Made by a program: the position numbers and the translations under genes. Below the pieces are notes generated by a model. That model ran no database searches. It saw only the letters and a program-made list of their open reading frames with translations, and was not told where the DNA came from. A DNA stretch of 63,377 nucleotides, the filler included, from Octopus bimaculoides (taxonomy: Eukaryota): the NCBI RefSeq assembly GCF_001194135.2. It is 4 parts of 4 records of this genome, joined end to end, with 100 filler letters (N's around TTAATTAATTAA, not from the genome) between each part and the next. Parts side by side here need not be neighbours in the genome. Positions count along the whole stretch, not along the records: positions 1 to 20,287 come from NC_068996.1; 3 more parts are not named here. One strand, 5' to 3'. Positions 1 to 20,287 of this stretch are shown here, in pieces. Each line of letters opens with the position of its first letter. Positions within the stretch are counted from its first letter, which is position 1.

Positions 1-308
1 GGCCTTCGTAGGATTTTTGAGCGAGATCGTTGCCAGTGCCCCTGGACTGGCTCTTGTGCGGGTGGCACATAAAATACACCATTTTGAGCGTGGCTGTTGC
101 CAGTACCTCCTGACTGGCTTTCATGCGAGTGACACGTAAAAGCACCCACTACACTCTCTGAGTGGTTGGCATTAGGAAGAGCATCCAGCTGTAGAAACTC
201 TGCCAAATCAGATTGGAGGCTGGTGTTGCCATCCGGTTTCACCAGTCCTCTGTCCAATCGTCCAACCCATGCTAGCATGGAAAGCGGATGTTAAACGATG
301 ATGATGAT
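1..308 (+). mobile_element. RTE-type tail retroposon (family R), ends in (GAT)n
   Basis: GGTTGGCATTAGGAAG.GCATCCAGCTGTAGAAAC...GTTAAACGATGATGAT, shared with four other copies. Confidence 0.8.
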
Positions 309-2725: not shown

Positions 2726-3152
2726 AAACCCCAACCTAAAATAGTGTTGCCACTCTGTTCAGAGAAACCTTTATAATTATATCCATGTATAATGCTTACG
2801 CCTTCCCTTTCCTTAGAAGTGATTGCCCCTTATACTATAAGCACTAGATAAGAGACAATAAAATCAGAGACAGTTAGAATTCTACCTAGAACTAATTACT
2901 AGCCTGCTAGCCTTGGCTATGTCAAGATGGATTTTTATGTATTCTTCTTCCCACTTGGATTTTAAATGTTGCCACAATTATAATATGTCTATTCTACTGT
3001 AATTTTCTACATTTTTGTGCAGCTGAATATTGCTCTACATATTGCATTTAATGTAATGCTTGCATTGCTTAAATAAATGGAGTAGCATGAAACGGGTGTA
3101 CTGCAGTCATCTTTAAAATCTGTGTTGCTTATTTTGATTTATATATATATAT

Positions 3153-3500
3153 ATCATCATCATCATCATCATCGTTTAACGTCCACTTTCCATGCTAGCA
3201 TGGGTTGGACGATTTGACTGAGGACTGGTGCAACTGGATGGCTACACCAGGCTCCAATCTAATTTGGTAGAGTTTCTACAGCTGGATGCCTTTCCTAACG
3301 CCAACCACTCAGAGAGTGTAGTGGGTGCTTTTACGTGTCACCCGCACGAAAACGGCCACGTTTGGAATGGTGTCTTTTATGTGCCACCCGCACAAGAGCC
3401 AGTCTAGGGGCACTGGCAACAATCTCGCTCGAAAATCCTACAAGGCCAGTCAGGCGGTACTGGCAACGGTCACGCTCAGGATGGTACATCTTATGTGCCA
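3153..3500 (-). mobile_element. Family R retroposon
   Basis: (CAT)n-CGTTTAACGTCC... reverse copy. Confidence 0.8.
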
Positions 3501-4479
3501 NNNNNNNNNNNNNNNNNNNNNNNNNNNNNNNNNNNNNNNNNNNNNNNNNNNNNNNNNNNNNNNNNNNNNNNNNNNNNNNNNNNNNNNNNNNNNNNNNNNN
3601 NNNNNNNNNNNNNNNNNNNNNNNNNNNNNNNNNNNNNNNNNNNNNNNNNNNNNNNNNNNNNNNNNNNNNNNNNNNNNNNNNNNNNNNNNNNNNNNNNNNN
3701 NNNNNNNNNNNNNNNNNNNNNNNNNNNNNNNNNNNNNNNNNNNNNNNNNNNNNNNNNNNNNNNNNNNNNNNNNNNNNNNNNNNNNNNNNNNNNNNNNNNN
3801 NNNNNNNNNNNNNNNNNNNNNNNNNNNNNNNNNNNNNNNNNNNNNNNNNNNNNNNNNNNNNNNNNNNNNNNNNNNNNNNNNNNNNNNNNNNNNNNNNNNN
3901 NNNNNNNNNNNNNNNNNNNNNNNNNNNNNNNNNNNNNNNNNNNNNNNNNNNNNNNNNNNNNNNNNNNNNNNNNNNNNNNNNNNNNNNNNNNNNNNNNNNN
4001 NNNNNNNNNNNNNNNTATAATATAGATTTAATCAAAAGATTAAATGTGGTACTTAAAATGTTTGAGGCACCAGAATTTGGTAGGGTAAAAAAAACAAAAA
4101 CAAAATCAAGAGATTTGGTGAATAAAATTTGAAGATAAGTAACAAAAATTCAATAGCTTATAGCAGTATGTACGTTTCGTACAAGCTCCATTTATTCATG
4201 TAGTGAGAACACCACAGAATGTACAATGAAAATGTACTCCTCAGCTGCATAATGGAATTTCATTTTAGAAAGACATTTTGAAGATGTTTGCAAAAAACAA
4301 AAGTAAGAGAAGAAAACATACCATCTCGACTATGCTGCGGTTCAGCAGATTATATATATATATTAATGGCGTGTAGGGATACTGTATTTCGTTATGCAAT
4401 CATAATATCTTATAATGTATTTTAAACATTTTTATAAGCCAAAACTGTGTTCTATTGCATTAGCAGTGCTATTACAATA

Positions 4480-4748
4480 CTTGTTAAGGATATCTCTACC
4501 AATTTTCTGTAGAAATTGTATTCAGCACTGATTTGGCTATTTAAGCAAGAGTTTGCAGATGACTAATGGGTTGGATGTGGTGCTGACGAAGGAACAAAAA
4601 CTCCTGAAATATGTCATATAAGCCCATTGCCCATTTTTTATCTCCGGTTTCATTGCTGTTTATGTCAAGAGCCTCAAACACGAAACATAACACAATCAGA
4701 GGCTGGATATAATTTTTACTGAAAATCTGTAGAGATAACCTTAACAAG
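4480..4748. repeat. 47-bp inverted repeats enclosing the family 2 hammerhead
   Basis: 4480-4526 versus the reverse complement of 4702-4748: 40/47 identical. Confidence 0.85.
4583..4620 (+). ncRNA. Hammerhead-like motif, family 2
   Basis: CTGACGA-AGGA..TCCT-GAAA-TATGTCATATA. Distal stem I AATGGGT/GCCCATT. Proximal stem I is degenerate. Confidence 0.6.
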
Positions 4749-4776
4749 TGGTATATATATATATATATATATATAT

Positions 4777-5097
4777 AATTCAATAATAGGATAAAGTCTT
4801 TGTAAGAATTTATCAAGTAGTTAGCATGAAAAAACCTCATAAGGGAAAACTCCATCATTTATTCCCTATAAATATATATATTTATATAAGGGCATTACTA
4901 TACATAAATGCCTCATGTTAAGAGGGACTCTAAAGTCAAACTACCATAATAAACATATTTTTACCGAACGCGAGGGATGGCAACTCTCAAAGCTAGCCCC
5001 CTAAAAGCTGACTGAATGGTAGATCATGATTTCGTAATTAATGCAGTAATCTGCATCTTTTACTCATCAGTACATGTATGGTCAAGACATAAAAATA
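4777..5097 (-). repeat. Partial inverted copy 1 of the ~490-bp hammerhead repeat (runs into gap)
   Basis: Reverse complement matches the unit from TATTTTTATGTCTTGACC through CCTATTATTGAATTAT. Confidence 0.88.
5019..5073 (-). ncRNA. Type I hammerhead ribozyme, family 1, copy 1
   Basis: Reverse complement reads GTA CTGATGA GTAAAAGATGCAGATTACTGCATTAATTAC GAAA TCATGATC TAC. Confidence 0.86.
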
Positions 5098-5785
5098 NNN
5101 NNNNNNNNNNNNNNNNNNNNNNNNNNNNNNNNNNNNNNNNNNNNNNNNNNNNNNNNNNNNNNNNNNNNNNNNNNNNNNNNNNNNNNNNNNNNNNNNNNNN
5201 NNNNNNNNNNNNNNNNNNNNNNNNNNNNNNNNNNNNNNNNNNNNNNNNNNNNNNNNNNNNNNNNNNNNNNNNNNNNNNNNNNNNNNNNNNNNNNNNNNNN
5301 NNNNNNNNNNNNNNNNNNNNNNNNNNNNNNNNNNNNNNNNNNNNNNNNNNNNNNNNNNNNNNNNNNNNNNNNNNNNNNNNNNNNNNNNNNNNNNNNNNNN
5401 NNNNNNNNNNNNNNNNNNNNNNNNNNNNNNNNNNNNNNNNNNNNNNNNNNNNNNNNNNNNNNNNNNNNNNNNNNNNNNNNNNNNNNNNNNNNNNNNNNNN
5501 NNNNNNNNNNNNNNNNNNNNNNNNNNNNNNNNNNNNNNNNNNNNNNNNNNNNNNNNNNNNNNNNNNNNNNNNNNNNNNNNNNNNNNNNNNNNNNNNNNNN
5601 NNNNNNNNNNNNNNNNNNNNNNNNNNNNNNNNNNNNNNNNNNNNNNNNNNNNNNNNNNNNNNNNNNNNNNNNNNNNNNNNNNNNNNNNNNNNNNNNNNNN
5701 NNNNNNNNNNNNNNNNNNNNNNNNNNNNNNNNNNNNNNNNNNAAAAGGAAATAAAAATAATTTCAGTTATCTCTCTCTCTTTCTT

Positions 5786-5818
<33 letters not shown>

Positions 5819-6837
5819 CGCACATACACACACACTGAAAAATAGATGGTGAAAACATCAATGTGTTAGGGGAGTGAAATTCCAAGGATTTCAGCACACC
5901 GGTGGCAGGCATCCATTTGGGGGAGCCATGCTTTTCACATGGGCAACTTTATGTGGCCTGCTCCCATGTGGGTAGTAGAAACGCTCTTTTTGTGTATGCT
6001 CCTCAGGACAGAACACGCAATGTTGTCTATAGCGAAGTTTTATAGACAAGTCTTCATTGCAGCTGATGTGGTTATAAACAATGATCCGGAAGCATTGGCC
6101 GGACATATTCTCAAACCATGGCAACATGACTTATGGACTCTTCCTCTATTTTATTGGACAATGCTGACTTCTCCAACAACAATGCTCACTCGGCTGATAT
6201 CAGTGATTGGCTAAGTTGCTCATAGAGTTAACCTAGAAGGGACAGGCCCCTTATTTTTTGGTTAAGGCTGTTGGTAAGTTTTCCTAAGTTACTCCAATCC
6301 AGATCTCCAATGCAAGCCTTCAGATCAACCTTCTCTTATGCAGATCTCTAATGCAACTTAAAAAAAAAAACAGTCAATGAGTGGAAATAACCGATAAACT
6401 AATTCCTTATGGGATTTTCCAATCAAATTGCCNNNNNNNNNNNNNNNNNNNNNNNNNNNNNNNNNNNNNNNNNNNNNNNNNNNNNNNNNNNNNNNNNNNN
6501 NNNNNNNNNNNNNNNNNNNNNNNNNNNNNNNNNNNNNNNNNNNNNNNNNNNNNNNNNNNNNNNNNNNNNNNNNNNNNNNNNNNNNNNNNNNGGGTTAGGG
6601 TTTTAGGGTAAGGGAATCAAGCCAACAAAATAGTTGAAAGAAAGGGCTTCCAAACAGTTGCTTCATTTCCTAGAAATAGCAGCCAAGTCTTCCTCAAATC
6701 AAACTCTACCATCATTTAGAAAATGTGCTACACAGTACATAGAAAATTACCGAAAAATTGTTGAACAGATTTTCACCAAATTTGGCAAAAATACTCATTG
6801 GGTGAGTGGTTTGAAACGAGATTATCTAAAACTCTAT

Positions 6838-7566
6838 CCCTAACCCTAACTCTAAAACCCTATCCTTAACCCTAAAACCCTAACCCTGACCCTAAAACCC
6901 TAACCCTAACCCGAACCCTAACCCTAAAACCCCAAAGCTAAAACCAGTACAAACGTACGAATGATGTCATAAATAACAGTACCGCCAATAGTTGTTGTTG
7001 ACAACGGCAGTAATTTTATTCAAGGGAAAAGATCCCATTACACAGCCAGAACATGTTGTTGACAAACCACAGCAGTAATTGTTTTCACTTCAATAGACGT
7101 CAGTGATTAGTTGAAATTACCAAAATATGACAACTTTTAACATGAAATAATTTGGAATATAGAAACTTTTCTTAACAAGGCTAAGAGAAAAAGATGTTTT
7201 ATATGACACATTCTACCAGTATCCCAAGTTTGAAAGTGTTTCGTTTGGAAACAAATGGTGTCCACCAAATCAGAAAGATCCAAACATCATTTCTCTTGGC
7301 ATTTTTAAGAAAATTCTTTATTTTCAAAGTTATTTCGTGTTAAAGTTGTCGTATTCCTGTAATTCCAACCAATCAATGACGTCTATTGAAGTGAAAACAA
7401 TTACTGCTGTTGTTTGTCAACAACAACTTCCGGCAGTGTATATTACATTTGTCACTGTTATGTATGACATCGTTTGTGCATTTGTACTGGTTTTAGCTTT
7501 AGGGTTTTAGGGTTAGAGTTCGGGTTTTAGAGTTAGGGTTAGGGTTTTAGGGTCAGGGTTAGGGTT
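6838..7566. mobile_element. ~730-bp imperfect palindrome (foldback element) with telomere-like termini
   Basis: Left arm (CCCTAA/CCCTAAAA)n-GCTAAAACCAGTACAAA...CACTTCAATAGACGTCA is mirrored by TGACGTCTATTGAAGTG...TTTGTACTGGTTTTAGC-(TTAGGG/TTTTAGGG)n. Confidence 0.8.
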
Positions 7567-7644
7567 TTTTTCAGCTACTATTTTCGGAAAGACATTTTTG
7601 CCCCCTTCCACTCCAATTTCTTTATTTTTCACATTTTTCCATAA

Positions 7645-7815
7645 CTCTAACCCTAAAATCCCAACCCTAACCCTAAAACCCCAACCCTAACCCTAAAACC
7701 CCAACCCTAATCCTAAAACCCTGACTTTAAAACCCTAACTCTAAAACCCTAACCCTAAAACCTTAATTTTAAAACCCTATCCCTAACCCTGACACTAAAA
7801 ACCCTAACCCTAACT
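7645..7815. repeat. Degenerate telomere-like CCCTAA/CCCTAAAA tract (resumes at 8197-8232)
   Basis: Direct reading of the sequence. Confidence 0.85.
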
Positions 7816-7816
7816 T

Positions 7817-8196
7817 GGTACTATTCAAGATGAGTGGTCCCAGTGCGCGCACTCACGCATCCGCCCTAGCGTGTTGTGACTAGTCGATCCTACGGCTACC
7901 TAGCGCGAGTGCCCGTCATGCACATGTATGAGGGTTTTTCTAAACAAAGTAAATAATTTTTTTACACTAGATGTGACACCAAAATACACCCTGGAAGAAT
8001 GTAAAACAACGTTTTAAGAGTAAGATGGGGAAGATTCAACAAAAAAGAATTATTTACTTTGTTTAAAAAAAATTATTTACTTTGTTTTAAAAAAAAACCC
8101 TCATACATGTTTTGCACATACGCGCTAGATAGTAGTTGTAGGATCGACTAGCTAGCGCGGATGCGTGCACTGGGACCACTCTTCTTGAATAGTACC
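7817..8196. mobile_element. Merlin-related MITE/deletion derivative
   Basis: TIRs GGTACTATTCAAG..GAGTGGTCCCAGTGC / GCACTGGGACCACTC..CTTGAATAGTACC. Internal 7967-8040 is nearly identical to 8537-8608 of the adjacent transposase fragment. Confidence 0.75.
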
Positions 8197-8279
8197 CCCT
8201 AACCCTAAAACCCTAACCCCAACCCTAACACTAAAGACATAGTCTTTCAAAATCTACTGTTGTTCAATGATATCAGTAC

Positions 8280-8585
8280 TTGAGGGACATTACAAGTAAT
8301 TATCTTTTGCATAACCCCTACCAAATTGGTGGACTTGGGCACATCATAGAAATAGATGAATCTATGATGTTCAAATACAACGGAAGATGGGATAGAGAGG
8401 ATAAAAATAGGTTTTTACTCTTTGTACCTGACCGTTCTTCTGAAACTCTTCTACCACTTATTAAAAAATTTATCAAACCAGGGACGACTATATGTTCTGA
8501 TTGTTGGAGTGCGTCGTACAATGGGATTACTGAAATAGATGTGACACCAAAATACACCCTGGAAGAACGTAAAACCACGTTTTAA
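8280..8585 (+). pseudogene. Merlin (IS1016/IS1595-like) DDE transposase fragment
   Basis: IGGLGHIIEIDES...VPDRSSETLLPLIKKFIKPGTTICSDCW matches the Merlin GGxG.VEIDES and DRSAxTL..I...I.PGT.I.SD.W motifs. Internally deleted. Confidence 0.85.
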
Positions 8586-9939: not shown

Positions 9940-10063
9940 CTTGTTTTGCGCATGACGTGCACTCGCGCTAGGTAGTTGTAGAATCGACTAGTCACGACTC
10001 GCTAGTGCAGATGCGCGAGTGTGCGAATGAGTGCAACGGGACCACCCTTCTCGAATAGTTACC
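9940..10063. mobile_element. Right terminal region of a Merlin-family element
   Basis: GCGCTAGGTAGTTGTAGAATCGACTAG...GGGACCACCCTTCTCGAATAGTTACC is homologous to the TIR at 8120-8196. Confidence 0.65.
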
Positions 10064-10068
10064 CATGC

Positions 10069-10561
10069 AGTATTCGTCTGGTATGTTGATTTTTTTTGTT
10101 TATTTTTATGTGTCTTGACCATACATATACTGATGAGTAAAGGGTGCATATTACTGCACTGATTACGAAATCATGATCTACCATTCAGTCAGCTTTTAGG
10201 GGGCTAGCTTTGAGAGTTGCCATCCCTCGCATTCGGTAAAAATATGTTTATTATGGTAGTTTGACTTTAGAGTCCCTCTTAACATAAGGCATTTATGTAT
10301 AGTAATGCCCTTATATAAATAAACATATTTATAGGGAATAAATGATAGATTTTTCCCTTATGAGGTTTTTTCACGCCAACCACTTGATAAATTCTCACAA
10401 AGACTTTATCCTATTATTGAATTATAAATATAATCAGAATATATTCAGTGCTGAATTTTATTCTAAAAAAACACATGTATCGAGATGCAATTCGAAAAGC
10501 CAGCCTCTTACATAGATATATAAGGATAAACAATTTTCTATGTACTAGGCCGAATACATGG
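10069..10561 (+). repeat. ~490-bp hammerhead-containing repeat unit (retrozyme-like), copy 2
   Basis: Near-identical to 13252-13729 and 13730-14075. No long ORF. Confidence 0.9.
10127..10181 (+). ncRNA. Type I hammerhead ribozyme, family 1, copy 2
   Basis: ATA-CTGATGA-GTAA..GTGCA/TGCAC..TTAC-GAAA-TCATGATC-TAC. One stem I pair is mutated (ATA instead of GTA). Confidence 0.8.
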
Positions 10562-10700
10562 GAATCACTGTTACTTCTGTCTTTGAATGAAGAAGGTGTA
10601 AGTTTGTTTTGCCTGTTAGTTGCTTTGGTGAGGGATTGTTTTGTTTGTTGTGTGCTGCTTTGCGGCAGTGTAGTTGTGCTTTCTCTCTTTGAGAGTTAGT

Positions 10701-12059
10701 ATGGCTAATAAAAGTAGAAGGAATTCCTTTTACTCAGACCTTTTACTCCTCATCATCTGAGGTGGAGTTGTTAAGGACTGTTGAGGCTATAGACAGGGAA
10801 CTAGAAAAGAGGAGGTTCGCAGATGTCACCCGAGAAGAAGATGACAATGTGATAATTGATATGGAGAAATACAAGAAGCTGTTGAGTCGAGACGGTTACA
10901 CCGTACAAGTGACCCCTCCGCTCGAAACAACAAAACTGATAAAAGGAAGAACAATAATGTATAAGACTTATTCAATCAAGGAAAGGAAAATAGATCATAT
11001 GACAACGGAACAAGTGGAGAAGATGCTGAAGCCAATCTGGCAAGAAATAACATATCTTGCCAGAGGGCCGAAATTTGGGCAAATTGAAGTTAGATTCAAA
11101 AACGAAAACACGGCGAAGAAGCACGCGGCAACACCACTGAAGGATGAAGTGTTAGTACTTCTACCCACGTACCTGGGACAGAGAGCGACTCGGGTAAGGG
11201 TAGAAAGAATACCACCAGAAATTGACGTAGCCTGGATAGCAGCTGCTGTCTTGGCTGAAACTGAAGGAAAAATAGTGGTGCTCCAGGCAACTAAGACGAA
11301 AAGTGCAAATTGGAAAGGCCAAATATTAAACATGATAGTTCAAGTGAGGCAATAGAAGAGATGGTGGAAACAGTAACTATGGATGAAGTTGTAATGAATG
11401 TAAGAGTGGTGGGCAGGATACCGCGCTGTTTCAAATGTGGTCAGAAGGGCCACATAAAAGCAAAATGCCCTCTGCCAGATAAAAAAGTGGAGGAAGTGCA
11501 AGAAGAAAGCAGTAAGGAGAAGACGCAGGAGAGGCCCCGGGAAGAACAGGAGGAGGAGGAATTGGTTTCAGAAAAAGAGGAAGAATGGGAAAAGAGAAGG
11601 AAGAGGAAAAAGGCAAGTCCAACACACAAAGAACTTCACCCGACAACTACCCAAGGCCCACCCATACCCTCTCTATTCCACTCTTGCCCTGCAGACACTA
11701 AGCCTTCCCATTCCCTTCCATCACAAAAACAAAAGTAAAGAGTACATACAGACAATGCCTCAAAAATCTCCTCCTCCAGATGTTTTGCGTGTATAATTCA
11801 TGACAAAGACTTGTTTGCAGAGGCTTTCAAATGGGAAAACACGGTGCATGTTGGTGCGGAAGGTGTGAGTGGTCTGGTGCTACTATTAATGGCACAGCAA
11901 AGGATGGCTATAGAGAGACATAATGTGGATTATGAAATGTGGGAAGTTGACTCCGATAAGGAGAAGCTGTTACAGTTTGTTCAGTCTGAAGAACTGATAG
12001 AGAGATTTGGGTTGGATATAATTGAGTATAGGGGAAAGGAAGCAAGTGGTGTTGCCTGA
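10701..12059 (+). pseudogene. Frameshifted ORF1/gag-like protein with CX2CX4HX4C zinc knuckle
   Basis: ATG at 10701, then frames 10762-11355, 11310-11738 (VRVVGRIPRCFKCGQKGHIKAKC plus E/K-rich tail) and 11811-12059. About three frameshifts. Confidence 0.75.
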
Positions 12060-12111
12060 TGGGGTGGGTAGCACCATTTTCATCTTTACATTTATCCATC
12101 TTTCATTATAT

Positions 12112-13122
12112 TGTAGTGAAACCTCTCTCTCGGGTATTTATTTACGAATGATAACGTAGTGGCTAACATCTAGCTTTCGGCCGCTTGGACCCTTGTGTCC
12201 ATCTCCCTGATTGGCCCTTATTTGTGCGGCATTTGTCTCCAGTTCTGTTTCGTGCCAGGGTGAACATCAACCAATCGTGGCCTTCTGTTAAGGTCACGTG
12301 AGAGAGTGTTTTTTTCTGCTGTTTCTTGAGCCCCTTTTTATCTATAAATAGTCCTGCTTCATCTATGCCAGTTTGTCTTCAATTTCAGACCTCTTACAGC
12401 TCTGGTCGTTTGACCACACACCAACCAGCCGGTTTCCAGCGACGACGTCAACACCACCGATCTACTGTCTACTACGATGTCATCGCCAGTGCCAACAACA
12501 CCACCAGAGTATACGCTACCAACAGCAAACGCGGTTCCTTCTCAACACTGTTTGTGTGGATTGCTTCCACCTCGAAAATAACAGCCAGAACAACCTGCGA
12601 GAATCTTCTGTATTCAAGTAACCAGTCACAGCATCAACACTCAACTTCACACACAACATGTGACACCTCAGCTCTGCTATTTGGCCATGACTTCTTGTGT
12701 ACGGACATTCTACCTACTGTGTAACTCTTCTATGAACTGGTGTTTCTCTATCTTTGTGTTCAGGACTCTTATAGTCTGTTACAGACTCTTATTCCATGTA
12801 CTGTATTTCTCATTCACATACACACACATATTATTGTATACACACTCTTGTACATGAAGGTCTGTCTTATGTATTATATTACTTATACTGCCGCATGCAT
12901 GCACACACAGACACACAGTTCACTATGCTAATAAACTTACTCTTTATATATATCTAACGGTTGTGTCTCTGTCTCTCACTTTCCTTGCTGGCACTTGCTC
13001 GCATTTCACATGCGAGCCCTCTTATGTCATATTATATGTTTTGTGTCGACCGTGCGACACGTTAAAAGGAGCCTGCTTCCATACGTTGCCATTCTCCTTG
13101 GTTCGCACGGTTGTTCTCTACA
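12112..13122 (+). mobile_element. Solo LTR (Gypsy-like), 1011 bp
   Basis: TGTAG...CTACA termini, 4-bp TSD ATAT (12108-12111 and 13123-13126), TATAAATA at 12343, AATAAA at 12930. Confidence 0.85.
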
Positions 13123-13296
13123 ATATCATATGTTTTTATATATTTTATATTTTATTTTAATTGTACATTCTTTATGTTTCCCCAATGTAATTGCATGTCC
13201 CTCTTTGTCGGCCCCTCGTGGGTAATAAAGAAATATATGCTGAATACATGGAGTGTTCGTCTGGTATGTTTATTTTTATGTGTCTTGACCATACAT

Positions 13297-13351
13297 GTAC
13301 TGATGAGTAAAAGATGCAGATTACTGCATTAATTACGAAATCATGATCTAC
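13297..13351 (+). ncRNA. Type I hammerhead ribozyme, family 1, copy 3
   Basis: GTA-CTGATGA-GTAA AAG ATGCAG ATTA CTGCAT TAA TTAC-GAAA-TCATGATC^TAC. Full core, stems I-III, AUC cleavage triplet. Confidence 0.88.
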
Positions 13352-13786
13352 CGTTCAGTCAGCTTTTAGGGGGCTAGCTTTGAGAGCTGCCATCCCTCGC
13401 ATTCGGTAAAAATATGTTTATTATGGTAGTTTGACTTTAGAGTCCCTCTTAACATGAGGCATTTATGTATAGTAATGCCCTTATATAAATAAACATATTT
13501 ATAGGGAATAAATGATAGATTTTTCCCTTATGAGGTTTTTTCACGCCAACCACTTGATAAATTCTCACAAAGACTTTATCCTATTATTGAATTATAAATA
13601 TAATCAGAATATATTCAGTGCTGAATTTTATTCTAAAAAAACTCATATCGAGATGCAATTCGAAAAGCCCGCCTGTTACATAGATATATAGGGATAAACA
13701 ATTTTCTATGTACTAGGCTGAATACATGGAGTGTTCGTCTGGTATGTTGATTTTTTTTTGTTTATTTTTGTGTCTTGACCATACGT

Positions 13787-13841
13787 GTACTGATGAGTAA
13801 AGGGTGCATATTACTGCATTAATTACGAAATCATGATCTAC
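13787..13841 (+). ncRNA. Type I hammerhead ribozyme, family 1, copy 4
   Basis: Same core exactly 490 nt after copy 3. Inner stem II is GTGCA/TGCAT (G-U pair). Confidence 0.88.
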
Positions 13842-14422
13842 CTTTCAGTCAGCTTTTAGGGGGCTAGCTTTGAGAGATGCATTTCCTCGCGTTCGGTAAA
13901 AATGTGTTTATTATAGTAGTTTGACTTTAGAGTCCCTCTTAGCATGAGACATTTATGTATAGTAATGCCCTTATATAAATAAATATATTTATAGGGAATA
14001 AATGATGGAGTTTTCCATTATGAGGTTTTTTCACGCTAACCACTTGATAAATTCTCACAAAGACTTTATCCTATTNNNNNNNNNNNNNNNNNNNNNNNNN
14101 NNNNNNNNNNNNNNNNNNNNNNNNNNNNNNNNNNNNNNNNNNNNNNNNNNNNNNNNNNNNNNNNNNNNNNNNNNNNNNNNNNNNNNNNNNNNNNNNNNNN
14201 NNNNNNNNNNNNNNNNNNNNNNNNNNNNNNNNNNNNNNNNNNNNNNNNNNNNNNNNNNNNNNNNNNNNNNNNNNNNNNNNNNNNNNNNNNNNNNNNNNNN
14301 NNNNNNNNNNNNNNNNNNNNNNNNNNNNNNNNNNNNNNNNNNNNNNNNNNNNNNNNNNNNNNNNNNNNNNNNNNNNNNNNNNNNNNNNNNNNNNNNNNNN
14401 NNNNNNNNNNNNNNNNNNNTAT

Positions 14423-14924: not shown

Positions 14925-15410
14925 TGAACAGTCCCATTCACCAGTACTGACAAAATTTCATCTGTCAGTATTATTTGTGCTTTTTGTAGCATTCAACATG
15001 TATATAAGATGTTTTCTATGGATGATTATTGCCACTTATGACACTGAGAACAACAAATCCAAATTAAATTAGATGCAAAAATTAATATGCTTCCATCAGT
15101 AATAGCTAATTGATACATGGCCCACTGATTTTTTTGCGACATCACTGACTGTTTAGTCAGTGATAAAGTGCATCTGTTCAACAAGTTTCAATCTTGCATT
15201 TAATGGTAGGGTCTCTATTGCTGATGAGGCACAAATTTTCTGAAATCAGGTAATACAACAATCCCATCTGCCAGTGCTGATGAAATTTCATTTACTGACA
15301 TAATCTGTGCTTTTTAGCACTCAACATCTATACAAGATGATTTCCCTGAATGATTACCACAGCTTTTAGCATTGAAAACAACAAATCCAAATTAAGTTGT
15401 ATGTGCAAAT
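14925..15410. repeat. Old diverged direct duplication (period about 330)
   Basis: TGTGCTTTT..AGCA.TCAACAT.TATA.AAGATG and AACAACAAATCCAA recur. Confidence 0.6.
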
Positions 15411-15696
15411 CAATCATCATCATCATCATCATCATTTAACGTCTGTTGTCCATGGTGTTAATTTGCTTCAGCTTTATATTACACTAGCAGAGGCACCCGG
15501 AGTTGCTCGGGAATGAAATTGTTGCTTATATACTTGAAGAAAAAAAGGCAAAATATGCTGTATAGAAATTTGAGGACATTCTGTAGATGGACTCTCAGAT
15601 GAATGATGGCTGGGCGCCTCTCATGAATGGGGAAAATTGAAGATGTGCCAAAAAGCCTCATTGGTACTTGGAAACTTTTACGAAAATTAAAATGGG

Positions 15697-15983
15697 GATC
15701 GTTGCCAGTGCCCCTGGACTGGCTCTTGTGCGGGTGGCACATAAAATACACCATTTCGAGCGTGGCCGTTGCCAGTACCGCCTGACTGGTCTTCGTGCGG
15801 GTGACACNNNNNNNNNNNNNNNNNNNNNNNNNNNNNNNNNNNNNNNNNNNNNNNNNNNNNNNNNNNNNNNNNNNNNNNNNNNNNNNNNNNAGTGTTGCCA
15901 TCCGGTTTCACCAGTCTTCAGTCAAATCATCCAACCCATGCTAGCATGGAAAGCAGACGTTAAACGATGATGATGATGATGAT
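15697..15983 (+). mobile_element. Family R retroposon
   Basis: Near-identical to 1-308 across a gap. Confidence 0.8.
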
Positions 15984-16169
15984 TAAATGAAAAAAAATGA
16001 TTTACGTGAATATCCTCAGAAGAGTAATTGAAATAAATGGCGATTGTGGAGCCCCCCCCCCCAACGCACCTACGCACGCGCACACGCATACACACGTGTG
16101 TCTTTGTAAATATGTTTGTATACATAATCCCAAAACGAAGGTGAGTGTGTGTGAAAGAATGCTGGAGAT

Positions 16170-19100
16170 CTTAACATATGCATGTGTGTATGTAGGTGTG
16201 AAGGTGTGAAAATGTGGGGATGGGAATTGGCCAGTGCTGGTGTGTGCGTGGTGGTGTATTGTGATGTGATGTGTTGTGTGATATGGTGTAGTGTGGTGTG
16301 GCATGGTTTGATATAATGGTGTTGGGAGGTGGGGGAGGCGAGAGAGGGGAAAGCATGGGTGCAGTGTGGGGATTGATTTAGGGGTATGTGGGTAGGTAGA
16401 GGTTGAGGTAGAGGTGGAGTATGTGGGAGAGGGTGTAGGGGTGGGTTGTTAGGGATGGGGTGTAAGGGATGGGGTGTGAGGGATGGGATGGGAAGGAATG
16501 GGAAAGTGGGGTAGGAGTGTGTAGGGGTGGACTTATGAGGGAGGGTTGAGGAGGAAGGGGAAGGTGGGTATGGGAGGAGGGAGAAGGAAGAAGGGAGGGG
16601 AGAAAGAGAGGAGTGGAGAGAGAAAGAGAGCAGGAGAGGAGAGGTGGGTGGGAGAAAGTAGGAGGGAGGGGAGAGGGGGAGAGAGGCAAGGGAGATGGGG
16701 AGAGAGAGGCAAGGGAGAGGNNNNNNNNNNNNNNNNNNNNNNNNNNNNNNNNNNNNNNNNNNNNNNNNNNNNNNNNNNNNNNNNNNNNNNNNNNNNNNNN
16801 NNNNNNNNNNNNNNNNNNNNNNNNNNNNNNNNNNNNNNNNNNNNNNNNNNNNNNNNNNNNNNNNNNNNNNNNNNNNNNNNNNNNNNNNNNNNNNNNNNNN
16901 NNNNNNNNNNNNNNNNNNNNNNNNNNNNNNNNNNNNNNNNNNNNNNNNNNNNNNNNNNNNNNNNNNNNNNNNNNNNNNNNNNNNNNNNNNNNNNNNNNNN
17001 NNNNNNNNNNNNNNNNNNNNNNNNNNNNNNNNNNNNNNNNNNNNNNNNNNNNNNNNNNNNNNNNNNNNNNNNNNNNNNNNNNNNNNNNNNNNNNNNNNNN
17101 NNNNNNNNNNNNNNNNNNNNNNNNNNNNNNNNNNNNNNNNNNNNNNNNNNNNNNNNNNNNNNNNNNNNNNNNNNNNNNNNNNNNNNNNNNNNNNNNNNNN
17201 NNNNNNNNNNNNNNNNNNNNNNNNNNNNNNNNNNNNNNNNNNNNNNNNNNNNNNNNNNNNNNNNNNNNNNNNNNNNNNNNNNNNNNNNNNNNNNNNNNNN
17301 NNNNNNNNNNNNNNNNNNNNNNNNNNNNNNNNNNNNNNNNNNNNNNNNNNNNNNNNNNNNNNNNNNNNNNNNNNNNNNNNNNNNNNNNNNNNNNNNNNNN
17401 NNNNNNNNNNNNNNNNNNNNNNNNNNNNNNNNNNNNNNNNNNNNNNNNNNNNNNNNNNNNNNNNNNNNNNNNNNNNNNNNNNNNNNNNNNNNNNNNNNNN
17501 NNNNNNNNNNNNNNNNNNNNNNNNNNNNNNNNNNNNNNNNNNNNNNNNNNNNNNNNNNNNNNNNNNAGGGGAAAAGGGAGGCGGGAGATGGCAGGGCGGG
17601 TTCGGGGGAGAGAGCAGATGCACGGTCTATGGAATGTGCTCTGGCAAGGGTGGTGTGGATGGTGGTGAGGGGATATCCCCATAGGATGAAGTGGCGAGCC
17701 ATAAGTTGAGACTGAGTCTCAAGGTCATGGTTGTCACTACAGAGCCTGCGTAGACGGAAGAATTGGGAATAGGGGACGGAAAGCTTGGTATGTTTAGGGT
17801 GGGAGGAGGTGAAGTTGAGATAAGAGTGTGAGTCTGTGTGTTTGTAGTGGATGGAGGTGGTAAGAGTGGAGTGATGAATGCTGACCGAAATGTCAAGAAA
17901 GGAGACAGAGGTGTCAGAGATAATGCAGGAGAAGTGGAGGGCAGGATGGAAGGATTTGGCAAAAGAGAGGAACGAATCTAGATGTTCGTGGGAGAGTGAG
18001 GTGGCACCGATACAGTCATCAATATAATGGCCATATAGTTCGGGAGTAGGACCAGTGAAACTTGAGAATATTTGCACCTCAACATACCCAATGAATAGGT
18101 TCGCATAGTTGAGGCCCATTCTCGTTCCCATTGGCCACTCCCGAGAACTGTTGGTAGAAATCACTCGTGAACGAGAAGCAGTTGAGTGAAAGGACAAGTT
18201 TGGCCAGACGAACGAGTGTGGAGGTGTCGGGTTGTGGGTTGGGTCGGAGGTCAAGGAAATGTTTAAGTGCATGCAGCCCTTTGTCGTGAGGGATCACCGT
18301 GTAGAAGCTCTGGATGTTGAGGGTGAAAAGAAGCTTAGAAGGGCCAGGAGGGAAGGAAAAAGAGTTTGAACAAATGAAGCGCGTGTTGGTGTCATGGATG
18401 TGAGAAGGGAAAGAAGCCACTAGGAGGGTAAGGACACAGTCAAGGTAATTGGAGATAAGCTTGGTGGGGCAGTTACAGGATTGTTAGGTTTGTGGATCTT
18501 GGGGAAGAAGTAAATGGTNNNNNNNNNNNNNNNNNNNNNNNNNNNNNNNNNNNNNNNNNNNNNNNNNNNNNNNNNNNNNNNNNNNNNNNNNNNNNNNNNN
18601 NNNNNNNNNNNNNNNNNNNNNNNNNNNNNNNNNNNNNNNNNNNNNNNNNNNNNNNNNNNNNNNNNNNNNNNNNNNNNNNNNNNNNNNNNNNNNNNNNNNN
18701 NNNNNNNNNNNNNNNNNNNNNNNNNNNNNNNNNNNNNNNNNNNNNNNNNNNNNNNNNNNNNNNNNNNNNNNNNNNNNNNNNNNNNNNNNNNNNNNNNNNN
18801 NNNNNNNNNNNNNNNNNNNNNNNNNNNNNNNNNNNNNNNNNNNNNNNNNNNNNNNNNNNNNNNNNNNNNNNNNNNNNNNNNNNNNNNNNNNNNNNNNNNN
18901 NNNNNNNNNNNNNNNNNNNNNNNNNNNNNNNNNNNNNNNNNNNNNNNNNNNNNNNNNNNNNNNNNNNNNNNNNNNNNNNNNNNNNNNNNNNNNNNNNNNN
19001 NNNNNNNNNNNNNNNNNNNNNNNNNNNNNNNNNNNNNNNNNNNNNNNNNNNNNNNNNNNNNNNNNNNNNNNNNNNNNNNNNNNNNNNNNNNNNNNNNNNN

Positions 19101-20110
19101 NNNNNNNNNNNNNNNNNNNNNNNNNNNNNNNNNNNNNNNNNNNNNNNNNNNNNNNNNNNNNNNNNNNNNNNNNNNNNNNNNNNNNNNNNNNNNNNNNNNN
19201 NNNNNNNNNNNNNNNNNNNNNNNNNNNNNNNNNNNNNNNNNNNNNNNNNNNNNNNNNNNNNNNNNNNNNNNNNNNNNNNNNNNNNNNNNNNNNNNNNNNN
19301 NNNNNNNNNNNNNNNNNNNNNNNNNNNNNNNNNNNNNNNNNNNNNNNNNNNNNNNNNNNNNNNNNNNNNNNNNNNNNNNNNNNNNNNNNNNNNNNNNNNN
19401 NNNNNNNNNNNNNNNNNNGTAGGTGGGTTTAGCATATCAGGGAGGGAGAAGGGTAGTGGAGGGGTTGGGGTAGTGGCATCGGGTGTGATGGAATGTAGGA
19501 GTGAGTGAAGTTTGCAAAGTTTAGTGTCGGCAAGAAATTTATGAAAGAGATAATTTAAATGAATGATAAAGCGCAGTGTTGTGAGCATGGGATGGTGACA
19601 GAGAGGAGAAAAAGCTGGAGGGATAAGGCGGTCGATGGTATGAATTTTAGAGAGATTGGAGCGAATGGTGGCACGCATAAGGCGGTAGGAGGTGGTGCTG
19701 AGTATGGGTAGGATGGTGGTAGCAGAGTGGAGAGTGGGGTGGAAATGGAGGCAGTGATGTAAGCAGCAACTGAGAAGTGAAATATGAGTAATGAGAGTTG
19801 GATAGTTGGAAAGATCTGTAGTCTGGCATGATGGTAAGAGAAAAAAAAAGAAAAAAGGAGGAGAAAAAAGGAAAAAAGCGTGAGAAGAAAATATATGCGA
19901 GGTGGGAGGAAAAAAAAAAACAAAACAGAGAAAGAAACGAGGAAGATGGGACAATAGAGAGAAAAGGGGGAGTAAGTGAGAGGAGAGGACGAGAGGAGAA
20001 AAGAAATGGAGGGAGAGGGAGACAAAGTAACAGGTGCAGATTAGAGGAAACAGATTAAGAACATCCAGAGTACGAAGAGGCAGTAAGTAAAGGAAAGGAA
20101 AGAAAATATA
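16170..20110 (-). mobile_element. Penelope-like retroelement (degraded, gapped)
   Basis: RT motifs PMGTRMGLNYANLFIG, YGHYIDDC, SFLDISV, IHYKHTDSHSYLNFTSSHP, SVPYSQFFRLRRLCS at 17570-18520, with a frameshift near 18135. N-terminal part at 19420-19850. Confidence 0.88.
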
Positions 20111-20287
20111 ATAATTAATTCGTTTTATTGGCCACAAGGGCTAATATCAATTAAAAACATATAAGGACAAAAGCAGGACGAAGGTTACAAAAGGTTTTGT
20201 CCGAAAAGGTAGGAAAGTTCGTCTAAACAGAGGAAAGAAAACGGAGAAAGATATAATAAATAAATAGATAAATAAATAAATAGAACT

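What the first reader, a model, noticed from the sequence alone, without database searches (positions are those of the whole stretch)
10069..14075. Tandem ~490-nt non-coding repeat carrying a hammerhead ribozyme in every unit: a candidate cephalopod retrozyme/circRNA system
Seen: four copies (4777-5097 on -, 10069-10561, 13252-13729, 13730-14075+) each contain GTA-CUGAUGA-stemII-GAAA-UCAUGAUC^UAC. Stem I extends through an internal loop to UGAC/GUCA. Cleavage sites in copies 3 and 4 (after 13348 and 13838) are exactly 490 nt apart. Known: tandem repeats with type I hammerheads (non-LTR retrozymes, Penelope-associated hammerheads) occur in several metazoans and yield monomeric and circular RNAs. 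Inference: this is such an element. I cannot tell whether this family has been described in cephalopods.
Basis: partly seen in the sequence, partly recalled or inferred. Interest (0 to 1): 0.92.

Follow-up and report, generated by a model that had tools for sequence, protein, structure and literature searches.

The report
Hammerhead-ribozyme repeat (retrozyme) in octopus DNA
A ~490-base non-coding repeat in what is almost certainly octopus DNA carries a complete self-cutting hammerhead ribozyme in every copy. It looks like a new octopus member of the known animal "retrozymes", repeats that make small circular RNAs, rather than a new kind of system.

Summary
Four copies (93-97% identical) of an AT-rich, non-coding unit of about 480-493 nt lie at the stated coordinates. 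Each carries a type I hammerhead with an intact catalytic core, and the cleavage sites of copies B and C are exactly 490 nt apart. Three corrections apply. Only B and C are directly head-to-tail. Copy A is separated from B by a 2677-bp gag-like retroelement flanked by a 13-nt duplication of unit sequence, so the array once had at least three units. Copy A reads AUA instead of GUA, which breaks one of three proximal helix I pairs. Copies C and D both end in assembly gaps.

No Rfam hammerhead model detects the motif, probably because helix II is long (30 nt) and proximal helix I is short. A stringent descriptor found none in 76 Mb of random sequence.

Helix III is two A-U pairs plus a CAUG loop inside the palindrome AUCAUGAU, so neighbouring units could cleave as a double hammerhead.

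Homologues of the inserted gag-like gene are all from Octopus. A Penelope-like reverse transcriptase remnant lies about 3.5 kb away.

Verdict: a new (octopod) member of the metazoan non-LTR retrozymes. Activity and circular RNA are untested. Four copies give no statistical evidence of selection on the ribozyme.

The parts
10064..10561 (+). Repeat copy A, a full unit of about 493-498 nt. Its left edge abuts the right terminal inverted repeat of a DNA transposon that ends at 10063. It starts with CATGc, the last 5 nt of a preceding unit.
10114..10193 (+). Hammerhead domain of copy A. Predicted cleavage is after C10178. G2.3 is mutated to A, giving an A.C mismatch in the 3-bp proximal helix I.
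10549..10561 (+). Left copy of the 13-nt duplication GCCGAATACATGG. It is the last 13 nt of the unit and reads as a target-site duplication of the insert.
   Evidence: sequence read directly
10562..13238 (+). A 2677-bp insertion that splits the array and is not part of the ribozyme repeat. It is a decayed retroelement or retrocopy with a frameshifted gag-like gene (RRM-like domain plus CCHC knuckle; ORFs 10762-11355 and 11310-11738). It has CCAAT/TATA-like motifs near 12210-12350 and AATAAA at 13224-13229, 9 nt before its end.
13239..13251 (+). Right copy of the 13-nt duplication GCTGAATACATGG.
13252..13729 (+). Repeat copy B, 478 nt. It lacks a 13-nt T-rich stretch present in A and C.
13284..13363 (+). 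Hammerhead domain of copy B. Order: helix I (5' strand), CUGAUGA at 13300-13306, helix II, GAAA, AUCAUGAU palindrome (helix III), C17 at 13348, helix I (3' strand).
13349..13838 (+). Predicted 490-nt monomer RNA running from one cleavage site to the next. GC is 32.9%. The circular minimum free energy is -111.4 kcal/mol, z = -2.3 against shuffles.
13730..14075 (+). Repeat copy C, directly head-to-tail with B and cut off by the assembly gap 14076-14419. Its hammerhead domain is 13774-13853 with cleavage after C13838.
4768..5097 (-). Repeat copy D, a partial unit in inverted orientation about 5 kb upstream of copy A. Its 5' side is lost in the gap 5098-5742 and its 3' side ends in (TA)n. Its hammerhead domain is 5007-5086 (-), with cleavage between 5022 and 5021.
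17607..18518 (-). Remnant of a Penelope-like element (RT core plus HTH_animal region), frameshifted and bounded by N gaps. It is a candidate representative of the autonomous partner family and is not physically part of the repeat.

Best explanation
The ~480-493-nt unit is a non-autonomous, non-coding retroelement of the metazoan non-LTR retrozyme type, in an octopod genome.

Shown from sequence:
- Each unit encodes a type I hammerhead. The order is helix I 5' strand, CUGAUGA, a long bipartite helix II, GAAA, a 2-bp helix III capped by CAUG, cleavage after C17, then helix I 3' strand.
- Units lie head-to-tail. B-C are contiguous, and A-B were contiguous before a later retroelement insertion.

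Inferred from the published behaviour of such elements:
- Monomeric helix III is only two A-U pairs, but it sits in the 8-nt palindrome AUCAUGAU. Cleavage is therefore most likely efficient only when two ribozymes, from neighbouring units or two transcripts, pair into a double hammerhead, as in newt and axolotl repeats.
- Helix I brings the two ends of the monomer together. A host RtcB-type tRNA ligase closes it into a circle.
- A reverse transcriptase of a Penelope-like element copies the circle by rolling-circle synthesis into multimeric cDNA. This integrates as a new tandem array.
For: - Four copies at 93-97% identity, each with a perfect 13-nt core and the same helices.
- A stringent descriptor found 0 matches in 76 Mb of random sequence.
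- The B/C cleavage sites are 490 nt apart.
- The A-B gap is a 2677-bp insert flanked by a 13-nt duplication of unit sequence. Removing the insert and one duplicate reproduces the B/C junction.
- The distal helix II pair is G-C in A, A-U in B and D, and G.U in C.
- The double-hammerhead fold lies 5-8 kcal/mol above the cofold optimum. In B&C it is below the sum of the two monomer optima (-34.5 vs -30.4). The monomeric hammerhead fold lies about 8-11 kcal/mol above the monomer optimum.
- In the predicted fold of the linear monomer, the 5' and 3' ends pair through helix I.
- GC is 32.9%.
- No ORF over 59 aa lies wholly inside a unit, and a joined query of five unit ORFs had no protein homologue.
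- A PLE RT remnant lies at 17607-18518 (-). Its relatives carry GIY-YIG, and one (L002) has a canonical type I hammerhead about 800 bp after its ORF.
- Literature: metazoan retrozymes, dimer-dependent hammerheads and RtcB circularisation (PMC7229834, PMC7761336); unit lengths of 51-972 bp and most families having at most 7 units (bioRxiv 10.64898/2026.07.22.740005).
Against: - No Rfam hammerhead family matches at any threshold. A canonical PLE-linked hammerhead in L002 scores 29.8 bits with the same tool.
- Proximal helix I has only 3 bp before a 7/6-nt internal loop, and copy A has lost one of them.
- Among these four copies the hammerhead domain is as variable as the rest of the unit: 8/80 against 22/233 columns, P=0.83. 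The invariant core has a 25% chance expectation.
- Covariation is not distinguishable from shuffles (257/500).
- The monomer is only modestly more stable than shuffles: z = -2.3 to -2.9, with 64% against 61% of bases paired.
- No transcript data are available.
- No further copies were found in any collection I could search.
- Only two units are physically contiguous, and both array ends are obscured by a transposon end on the left and an assembly gap on the right.
Confidence: 0.7

Rival explanations
1. Fossil repeat. The unit descends from a retrozyme or PLE-derived hammerhead repeat, but the family, or at least these copies, is dead. It is not transcribed or no longer self-cleaves, and persists as ordinary decaying satellite-like DNA.
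For: - Copies differ by 3-7%.
- Copy A has a helix I mismatch.
- The array has been invaded by another retroelement and abutted by a DNA transposon.
- The hammerhead domain is no better conserved than the rest of the unit.
- Helix I and helix II are atypical and Rfam gives no hit.
Against: - The 13 core nucleotides, G10.1-C11.1, A15.1-U16.1 and C17 are intact in all four copies.
- Three of four copies keep all helices.
- One helix II pair shows a compensatory change.
- 3-7% divergence is well within the range of recently active repeat families.
Confidence: 0.22
2. Composite element. Copies A and B are pseudo-LTRs of one Penelope-like or LTR-retrozyme-like element whose internal part is the 2.7-kb gag-like region, rather than neighbours in an array split by an unrelated insertion.
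For: - Direct repeats carrying a hammerhead flank an internal region with a CCHC gag-like ORF.
- PLEs form partial tandems with hammerheads in pseudo-LTRs, and one algal PLE type has a zf-CCHC ORF (PMC8557442).
Against: - The internal region has no RT or GIY-YIG.
- Its gag-like gene belongs to a family of 393 homologues, found alone or fused to unrelated host domains in Octopus gene models.
- It is bounded by an exact 13-nt duplication of unit sequence and ends 9 nt after an AATAAA. This is what a retro-insertion with a target-site duplication looks like.
- B and C are joined directly, with no internal region.
- The ribozyme is type I, not the type III of LTR retrozymes.
Confidence: 0.05
3. 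Chance. An ordinary AT-rich dispersed repeat happens to contain a hammerhead-like string with no ribozyme ancestry.
For: - No Rfam support.
- All four occurrences are copies of one ancestral sequence, so they count as a single event.
- A relaxed descriptor also hits three unrelated weak sites in the window.
Against: - There were 0 matches to the stringent descriptor in 76 Mb of composition-matched random sequence.
- The motif also has a second helix I segment, a 5-7-bp distal helix II and a palindromic helix III.
- It sits in a head-to-tail repeat of retrozyme size, in a genome with PLEs.
Confidence: 0.03

Closest known systems
Metazoan non-LTR retrozymes (Cervera & de la Pena, NAR 2020, PMC7229834), e.g. 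the ~350-390-bp Mytilus galloprovincialis repeats
   Same: - Type I hammerhead once per unit.
- Head-to-tail non-coding repeats of a few hundred bp.
- GC well below 45%.
- No LTR/PBS/PPT.
- Co-occurrence with Penelope-like elements.
- Mollusc host.
   Different: - The unit (478-493 nt) is longer than the 170-400 nt reported in that paper. It is within the 51-972 bp later reported for vertebrate families.
- Helix II is a 30-nt bipartite hairpin.
- Proximal helix I has only 3 bp.
- Rfam models miss it.
- The predicted circle is only slightly more self-paired than random.
- Expression and circles were not tested.
Newt/axolotl satellite 2 hammerheads (HHR_Amex1/Amex2), which cleave as dimers
   Same: Weak helix III, here 2 bp capped by a palindromic tetraloop as described for HHR_Amex2. 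The palindrome allows an extended intermolecular helix III, that is a double hammerhead. The genomic arrangement is tandem.
   Different: Different phylum and unrelated unit sequence. Here the palindrome is 8 nt (AUCAUGAU). Dimer dependence is only predicted, not measured.
Minimal hammerheads in pseudo-LTRs of Penelope-like elements and Terminons (Cervera & de la Pena 2014; Lunse et al. 2017; Arkhipova et al. 2017)
   Same: Type I topology, likely dimeric action, and association with PLE-containing genomes. A PLE RT remnant lies in the same window. Retrozymes have been proposed to be PLE derivatives (bioRxiv 10.64898/2026.07.22.740005).
   Different: - The unit is not attached to an RT/GIY-YIG ORF.
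- Helix III is not reduced to the minimal form, and helices I and II have internal loops.
- No sequence similarity was found between the unit and the PLE remnant or the related PLE loci fetched.
Plant LTR retrozymes (Cervera et al. 2016, PMC4918200)
   Same: Non-autonomous, ribozyme-processed, circular-RNA-forming retroelements. The superficial layout 'repeat with hammerhead, internal region, repeat with hammerhead' at A-insert-B is also shared.
   Different: Plant elements have type III hammerheads, true LTRs, PBS/PPT, 4-bp target duplications and GC above 55%. None of these applies here.

Membership tests
Metazoan non-LTR retrozyme | A type I hammerhead (helix I open, II and III closed) with an intact catalytic core in each repeat unit | tested here: met
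   CUGAUGA, G10.1-C11.1, GAAA, A15.1-U16.1 and C17 are present in all 4 copies. There were 0 matches in 76 Mb of random sequence.
Metazoan non-LTR retrozyme | [quoted passage not shown] | tested here: met
   B-C are contiguous with cleavage sites 490 nt apart. A-B are contiguous once the TSD-flanked insert is removed. The array length is unknown because of the gap at 14076. TRF itself reported no array.
Metazoan non-LTR retrozyme | Non-coding, low GC, no LTR/PBS/PPT | tested here: met
   GC is 32.9%. No ORF over 59 aa lies wholly within a unit. The tested unit ORFs have no homologues and are absent from the protein collection.
Metazoan non-LTR retrozyme | Highly self-paired monomer or circular RNA | tested here: inconclusive
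   Linear z = -2.9. Circular z = -2.3, with 64% of bases paired against 61% in shuffles.
Metazoan non-LTR retrozyme | Self-cleavage and accumulation of linear and circular monomer RNA | not testable with these tools
   No transcriptome or bench data are available.
Metazoan non-LTR retrozyme | Co-occurrence with autonomous Penelope-like elements in the genome | tested here: met
   An RT/HTH_animal remnant lies at 17607-18518 (-). Its relatives have GIY-YIG.
Rfam hammerhead families (RF00163 Hammerhead_1, RF02275 HH9 and others of clan CL00010) | Covariance-model score at or above the family's gathering threshold | tested here: not met
   There was no hammerhead hit at gathering or at E<=10, on the whole window or on 121 nt. 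The control hammerhead in L002 scored 29.8 bits, E=6e-6.
Dimer-dependent (double) hammerheads of amphibian satellite type | Weak helix III with a palindromic loop that allows an intermolecular helix III | tested here: met
   AUCAUGAU is an 8-nt palindrome, and the monomeric helix III is 2 A-U pairs plus CAUG. Dimer-dependent cleavage itself was not testable.
PLE pseudo-LTR hammerhead | Ribozyme-bearing terminal repeat flanking an RT + GIY-YIG ORF | tested here: not met
   The region between A and B encodes only a frameshifted gag-like CCHC protein, with no RT or EN. B-C are joined without any internal region.
Plant LTR retrozyme | Type III hammerhead in LTRs, PBS/PPT, 4-bp TSD | tested here: not met
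   The topology is type I. The duplication flanking the A-B insert is 13 nt and belongs to the insert.

The most novel reading that the evidence does not exclude
This is the first recognised cephalopod retrozyme. An octopus-lineage family would produce unusually large (~490-nt) circular RNAs through a dimer-dependent hammerhead. Its extended helix II and 3-bp proximal helix I put it outside current Rfam models, so standard annotation would have missed it.
Probability: 0.4. Interest if true: 0.5.

Novelty: new member of a known kind. Interest (0 to 1): 0.35.

Why it matters
If the family is active, octopods join corals, mussels and amphibians as animals that make abundant ribozyme-derived circular RNAs. 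Octopus would then be a tractable system for asking what these RNAs do, including in neural tissue. It would also show that covariance-model annotation under-counts hammerheads whose helix II is extended. If it is a fossil, it is simply one more decayed repeat. Either way it extends a known class and does not open a new one.

Tried and rejected
- Rfam scans: I ran the whole window at gathering threshold, the whole window at E<=10, and a 121-nt slice. None gave a hammerhead hit. I do not treat this as disproof. The core is perfect, and the L002 control shows the tool does find canonical PLE-linked hammerheads.
- Exact-pattern scans for the ribozyme in metagenome, viral and prokaryote-genome collections gave 0 hits.
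- Spurious unit ORFs as handles: I looked for more copies by exact look-up of five unit ORFs and by a separate joined query of five unit ORFs. Neither found anything.
- The first search with the gag-like ORF through the word index gave nothing. The index-free search found 393 homologues.
- Thermodynamic folding alone does not predict the active hammerhead. It prefers UGAU/AUCA pairing.
- Covariation and conservation tests on four copies are uninformative.
- The relaxed descriptor hit three extra sites, at 4583-4611 (+), 4167-4244 (-) and 15221-15255 (+). I rejected them as probable noise because of poor helices and no Rfam support.
- I considered A-insert-B as an LTR-like composite element. 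I rejected it because of the 13-nt duplication, the terminal AATAAA and the absence of RT/EN.
- BLASTN of the unit and of the insert against the rest of the window and the fetched PLE loci found no extra copies.
Full report
**What is there**

The window is a gap-rich draft scaffold with eight N runs inside the piece. Repeat detection, alignment and BLASTN agree on four copies of one AT-rich unit:

| Copy | Coordinates | Strand | State |
|---|---|---|---|
| A | 10064-10561 | + | full unit |
| B | 13252-13729 | + | full unit |
| C | 13730-14075 | + | cut by the gap 14076-14419 |
| D | 4768-5097 | - | 5' side lost in the gap 5098-5742; 3' side runs into (TA)n |

Pairwise identity is 92.6-96.7%. 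The unit is 478 nt in B and about 493 nt in A. The difference is mainly a 13-nt T-rich indel. Tandem Repeats Finder lists no ~490-nt array, because only B and C are contiguous.

**The ribozyme**

Each copy contains, in this order:
- helix I 5' strand (UUGAC, a 7-nt loop side, then GUA);
- CUGAUGA;
- helix II: GUAA/UUAC, an internal loop, then a 5-7-bp distal stem and loop, 30 nt in all;
- GAAA;
- U-CAUG-A-U, then C17;
- helix I 3' strand (UAC, a 6-nt loop side, then GUCAG).

This is the type I topology. All canonical positions are present: C3-A9, G10.1-C11.1, G12-A14, A15.1-U16.1 and H17=C. The four pattern matches end at 10178, 13348, 13838 and 5022 (-). Copy A reads AUA, not GUA, which puts an A.C mismatch in a helix of only three pairs.

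**Is it chance?**

The four occurrences descend from one sequence, so they count once.
- A 'strict' descriptor occurred at least once in 3 of 300 dinucleotide shuffles of the window.
- A more demanding descriptor found nothing in 76 million strand-bases of composition-matched Markov sequence. It required G10.1-C11.1, helix II of at least 4 bp, helix III of at least 2 bp and helix I of at least 3 bp.
- The real motif also has the distal helix I segment and a palindromic helix III.

Chance is not a reasonable explanation.

**What does not support it**

- No Rfam hammerhead family matches. This holds at gathering threshold, at E<=10 on the window, and at E<=10 on a 121-nt slice. As a control, a canonical hammerhead I found downstream of a related Penelope-like ORF in locus L002 scores 29.8 bits (E=6e-6) against RF02275. 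The likely reasons for the miss are the 30-nt helix II and the short proximal helix I. I could not test this by trimming the sequence.
- Among the four copies the 80-nt hammerhead domain is as variable as the rest of the unit (8/80 against 22/233 columns, P=0.83). An invariant 13-nt core is expected by chance 25% of the time.
- One helix II pair is G-C, A-U or G.U in different copies, but the covariation measures equal their shuffled controls (257/500).
- Conservation therefore neither supports nor refutes function here.

**Monomer or dimer?**

Helix III in cis is two A-U pairs closed by CAUG, and it sits in the 8-nt palindrome AUCAUGAU.
- Free-energy folding of a single domain prefers an inactive pairing of UGAU (in CUGAUGA) with AUCA. 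This puts the hammerhead fold about 8-11 kcal/mol above the optimum.
- A double hammerhead has an 8-bp intermolecular helix III and reciprocal helix I. It lies 5-8 kcal/mol above the cofold optimum. For B with C it is below the sum of the two monomer optima (-34.5 against -30.4 kcal/mol).
- The energy model ignores the tertiary structure of the core, so this is only suggestive. It does match the published behaviour of amphibian type I hammerheads with the same kind of helix III (PMC7229834).

**The monomer RNA**

The 490-nt cleavage-to-cleavage RNA has 32.9% GC. Its predicted fold pairs the 5' and 3' ends through helix I. It is only modestly more stable than shuffles: z = -2.9 linear, z = -2.3 circular, with 64% of bases paired against 61%. 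It has no ORF above 59 aa wholly inside a unit. A joined query of five unit ORFs found no protein homologue, and none of the five unit ORFs tested by exact look-up is in the protein collection.

**The 2.7 kb between A and B**

Copy A ends ...GCCGAATACATGG at 10561. The sequence 13239-13251 is GCTGAATACATGG, followed by the normal start of a unit. Deleting 10562-13238 and one 13-mer reproduces the B/C junction.

The intervening 2677 bp ends 9 nt after an AATAAA. It carries a gag-like gene broken by frameshifts (ORFs 10762-11355 and 11310-11738, the latter with a CCHC knuckle).

An index-free search found 393 homologues. One Octopus bimaculoides protein, A0A0L8G4Z0, spans both window ORFs at 82% and 74% identity, which confirms a single disrupted gene. 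In gene models the domain occurs alone or fused to unrelated host domains such as WD40, LDL-receptor class A and C2H2. That pattern is typical of a mobile sequence.

I read this as a later retro-insertion with a 13-nt target-site duplication into an array that already had at least three units. The alternative is that A and B are pseudo-LTRs of one composite element. Three things argue against it: the duplication, the lack of RT or endonuclease, and the direct B-C junction.

**Organism**

Nine of the ten homologues of the gag-like ORF that I looked up carry a source name. All nine are from Octopus bimaculoides, O. vulgaris or O. sinensis. The window is therefore from an octopod, most likely the genus Octopus. 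I could not confirm the species.

**Surroundings**

- The left edge of copy A abuts the right terminal inverted repeat of a DNA transposon that ends at 10063.
- The right edge of the array is in a gap.
- On the minus strand at 17607-18518 lies a frameshifted RT plus HTH_animal remnant. Its relatives end in a GIY-YIG nuclease, so it belongs to a canonical Penelope-like element.
- That remnant has no detectable DNA similarity to the unit.

**Mechanism**

Shown: the anatomy described above.

Inferred from the literature on metazoan retrozymes (PMC7229834, PMC7761336, bioRxiv 10.64898/2026.07.22.740005):
1. The array is transcribed.
2. Paired hammerheads of neighbouring units cut the transcript into ~490-nt monomers.
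3. A host RtcB-type ligase circularises the monomers.
4. A PLE enzyme reverse-transcribes the circle by rolling-circle synthesis, and tandem cDNA integrates.

Copy D ends in a (TA)n tract at a point where the unit itself reads UAUAAAUAUAA. This is compatible with priming at an AT microsatellite, as reported for some PLEs (PMC8557442), but that is speculation.

**Comparison and novelty**

The element meets every sequence-testable criterion of metazoan non-LTR retrozymes. It fails the criteria of PLE pseudo-LTRs and of plant LTR retrozymes.

In the searchable library I found no description of retrozymes in cephalopods. The only mention is a count of 235 Rfam Hammerhead_1 hits in the giant squid genome paper (PMC6962438).

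It is a new member of a known kind, with a somewhat unusual ribozyme periphery.

Noticed in passing
window 17607-18518 (-): Remnant of a Penelope-like element: RT core and HTH_animal region, 50-61% identical to the PLE proteins aligned to it (best database hit 75%). It has a frameshift near 18112-18131 and is bounded by N gaps. The expected GIY-YIG part would fall in the gap 16721-17566.
   Followed up: yes
window 10562-13238 (+): A 2677-bp retro-insertion with a 13-nt target-site duplication. It carries a frameshifted gag-like gene (RRM-like domain plus CCHC knuckle). Of the ten homologues looked up, the nine that carry a name are all from Octopus species. In Octopus gene models the family is often fused to unrelated host domains, which suggests transposable-element contamination of annotations.
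   Followed up: yes
window 6826-6932, 7489-7568, 7642-7813, 8197-8232: Interstitial telomere-like arrays (AACCCT/TTAGGG with a 20-nt period that includes AAAA) in inverted orientation around a large palindrome (arms 7039-7137 and 7342-7440).
   Followed up: no
window 7817-8196 and 9947-10063: A 380-bp element with 42-nt terminal inverted repeats (GGTACTATTCAAGA...) is inserted in the telomere-like array. A second copy of its right end terminates at 10063, directly against hammerhead copy A.
   Followed up: partly
window 8280-8585 (+): ORF fragment matching the IS1595/ISXO2-like (Merlin-type) DDE transposase domain at 26.1 bits, just under the Pfam cut-off of 27.
   Followed up: partly
window 8-308, 3131-3500 (-), 15697-15988: Three copies (about 90-94% identical) of a SINE-like dispersed repeat associated with a (CAT)n/(ATG)n tract.
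   Followed up: no
window 4583-4611 (+), 4167-4244 (-), 15221-15255 (+): Three further hits to a relaxed hammerhead descriptor, against 0.11 expected per shuffled window. One lacks helix III, like minimal PLE hammerheads. All have poor helices; Rfam, run over 4120-4660 only, supports neither of the first two, and the third was not rescanned. They are probably noise, but two lie within 600 bp of copy D.
   Followed up: partly
locus L002 7977-8012 (+): A canonical type I hammerhead (Rfam HH9, 29.8 bits) lies about 800 bp downstream of a PLE RT/GIY-YIG ORF in an unrelated ENA contig. I used it as a positive control.
   Followed up: yes
window 14983-15414: A ~328-bp tandem duplication at 76% identity, of unknown nature.
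   Followed up: no
window 16000-16720 and 19420-20137: Long purine-rich (GGGAGA-type) low-complexity tracts on the plus strand, with GC skew up to +0.7.
   Followed up: no
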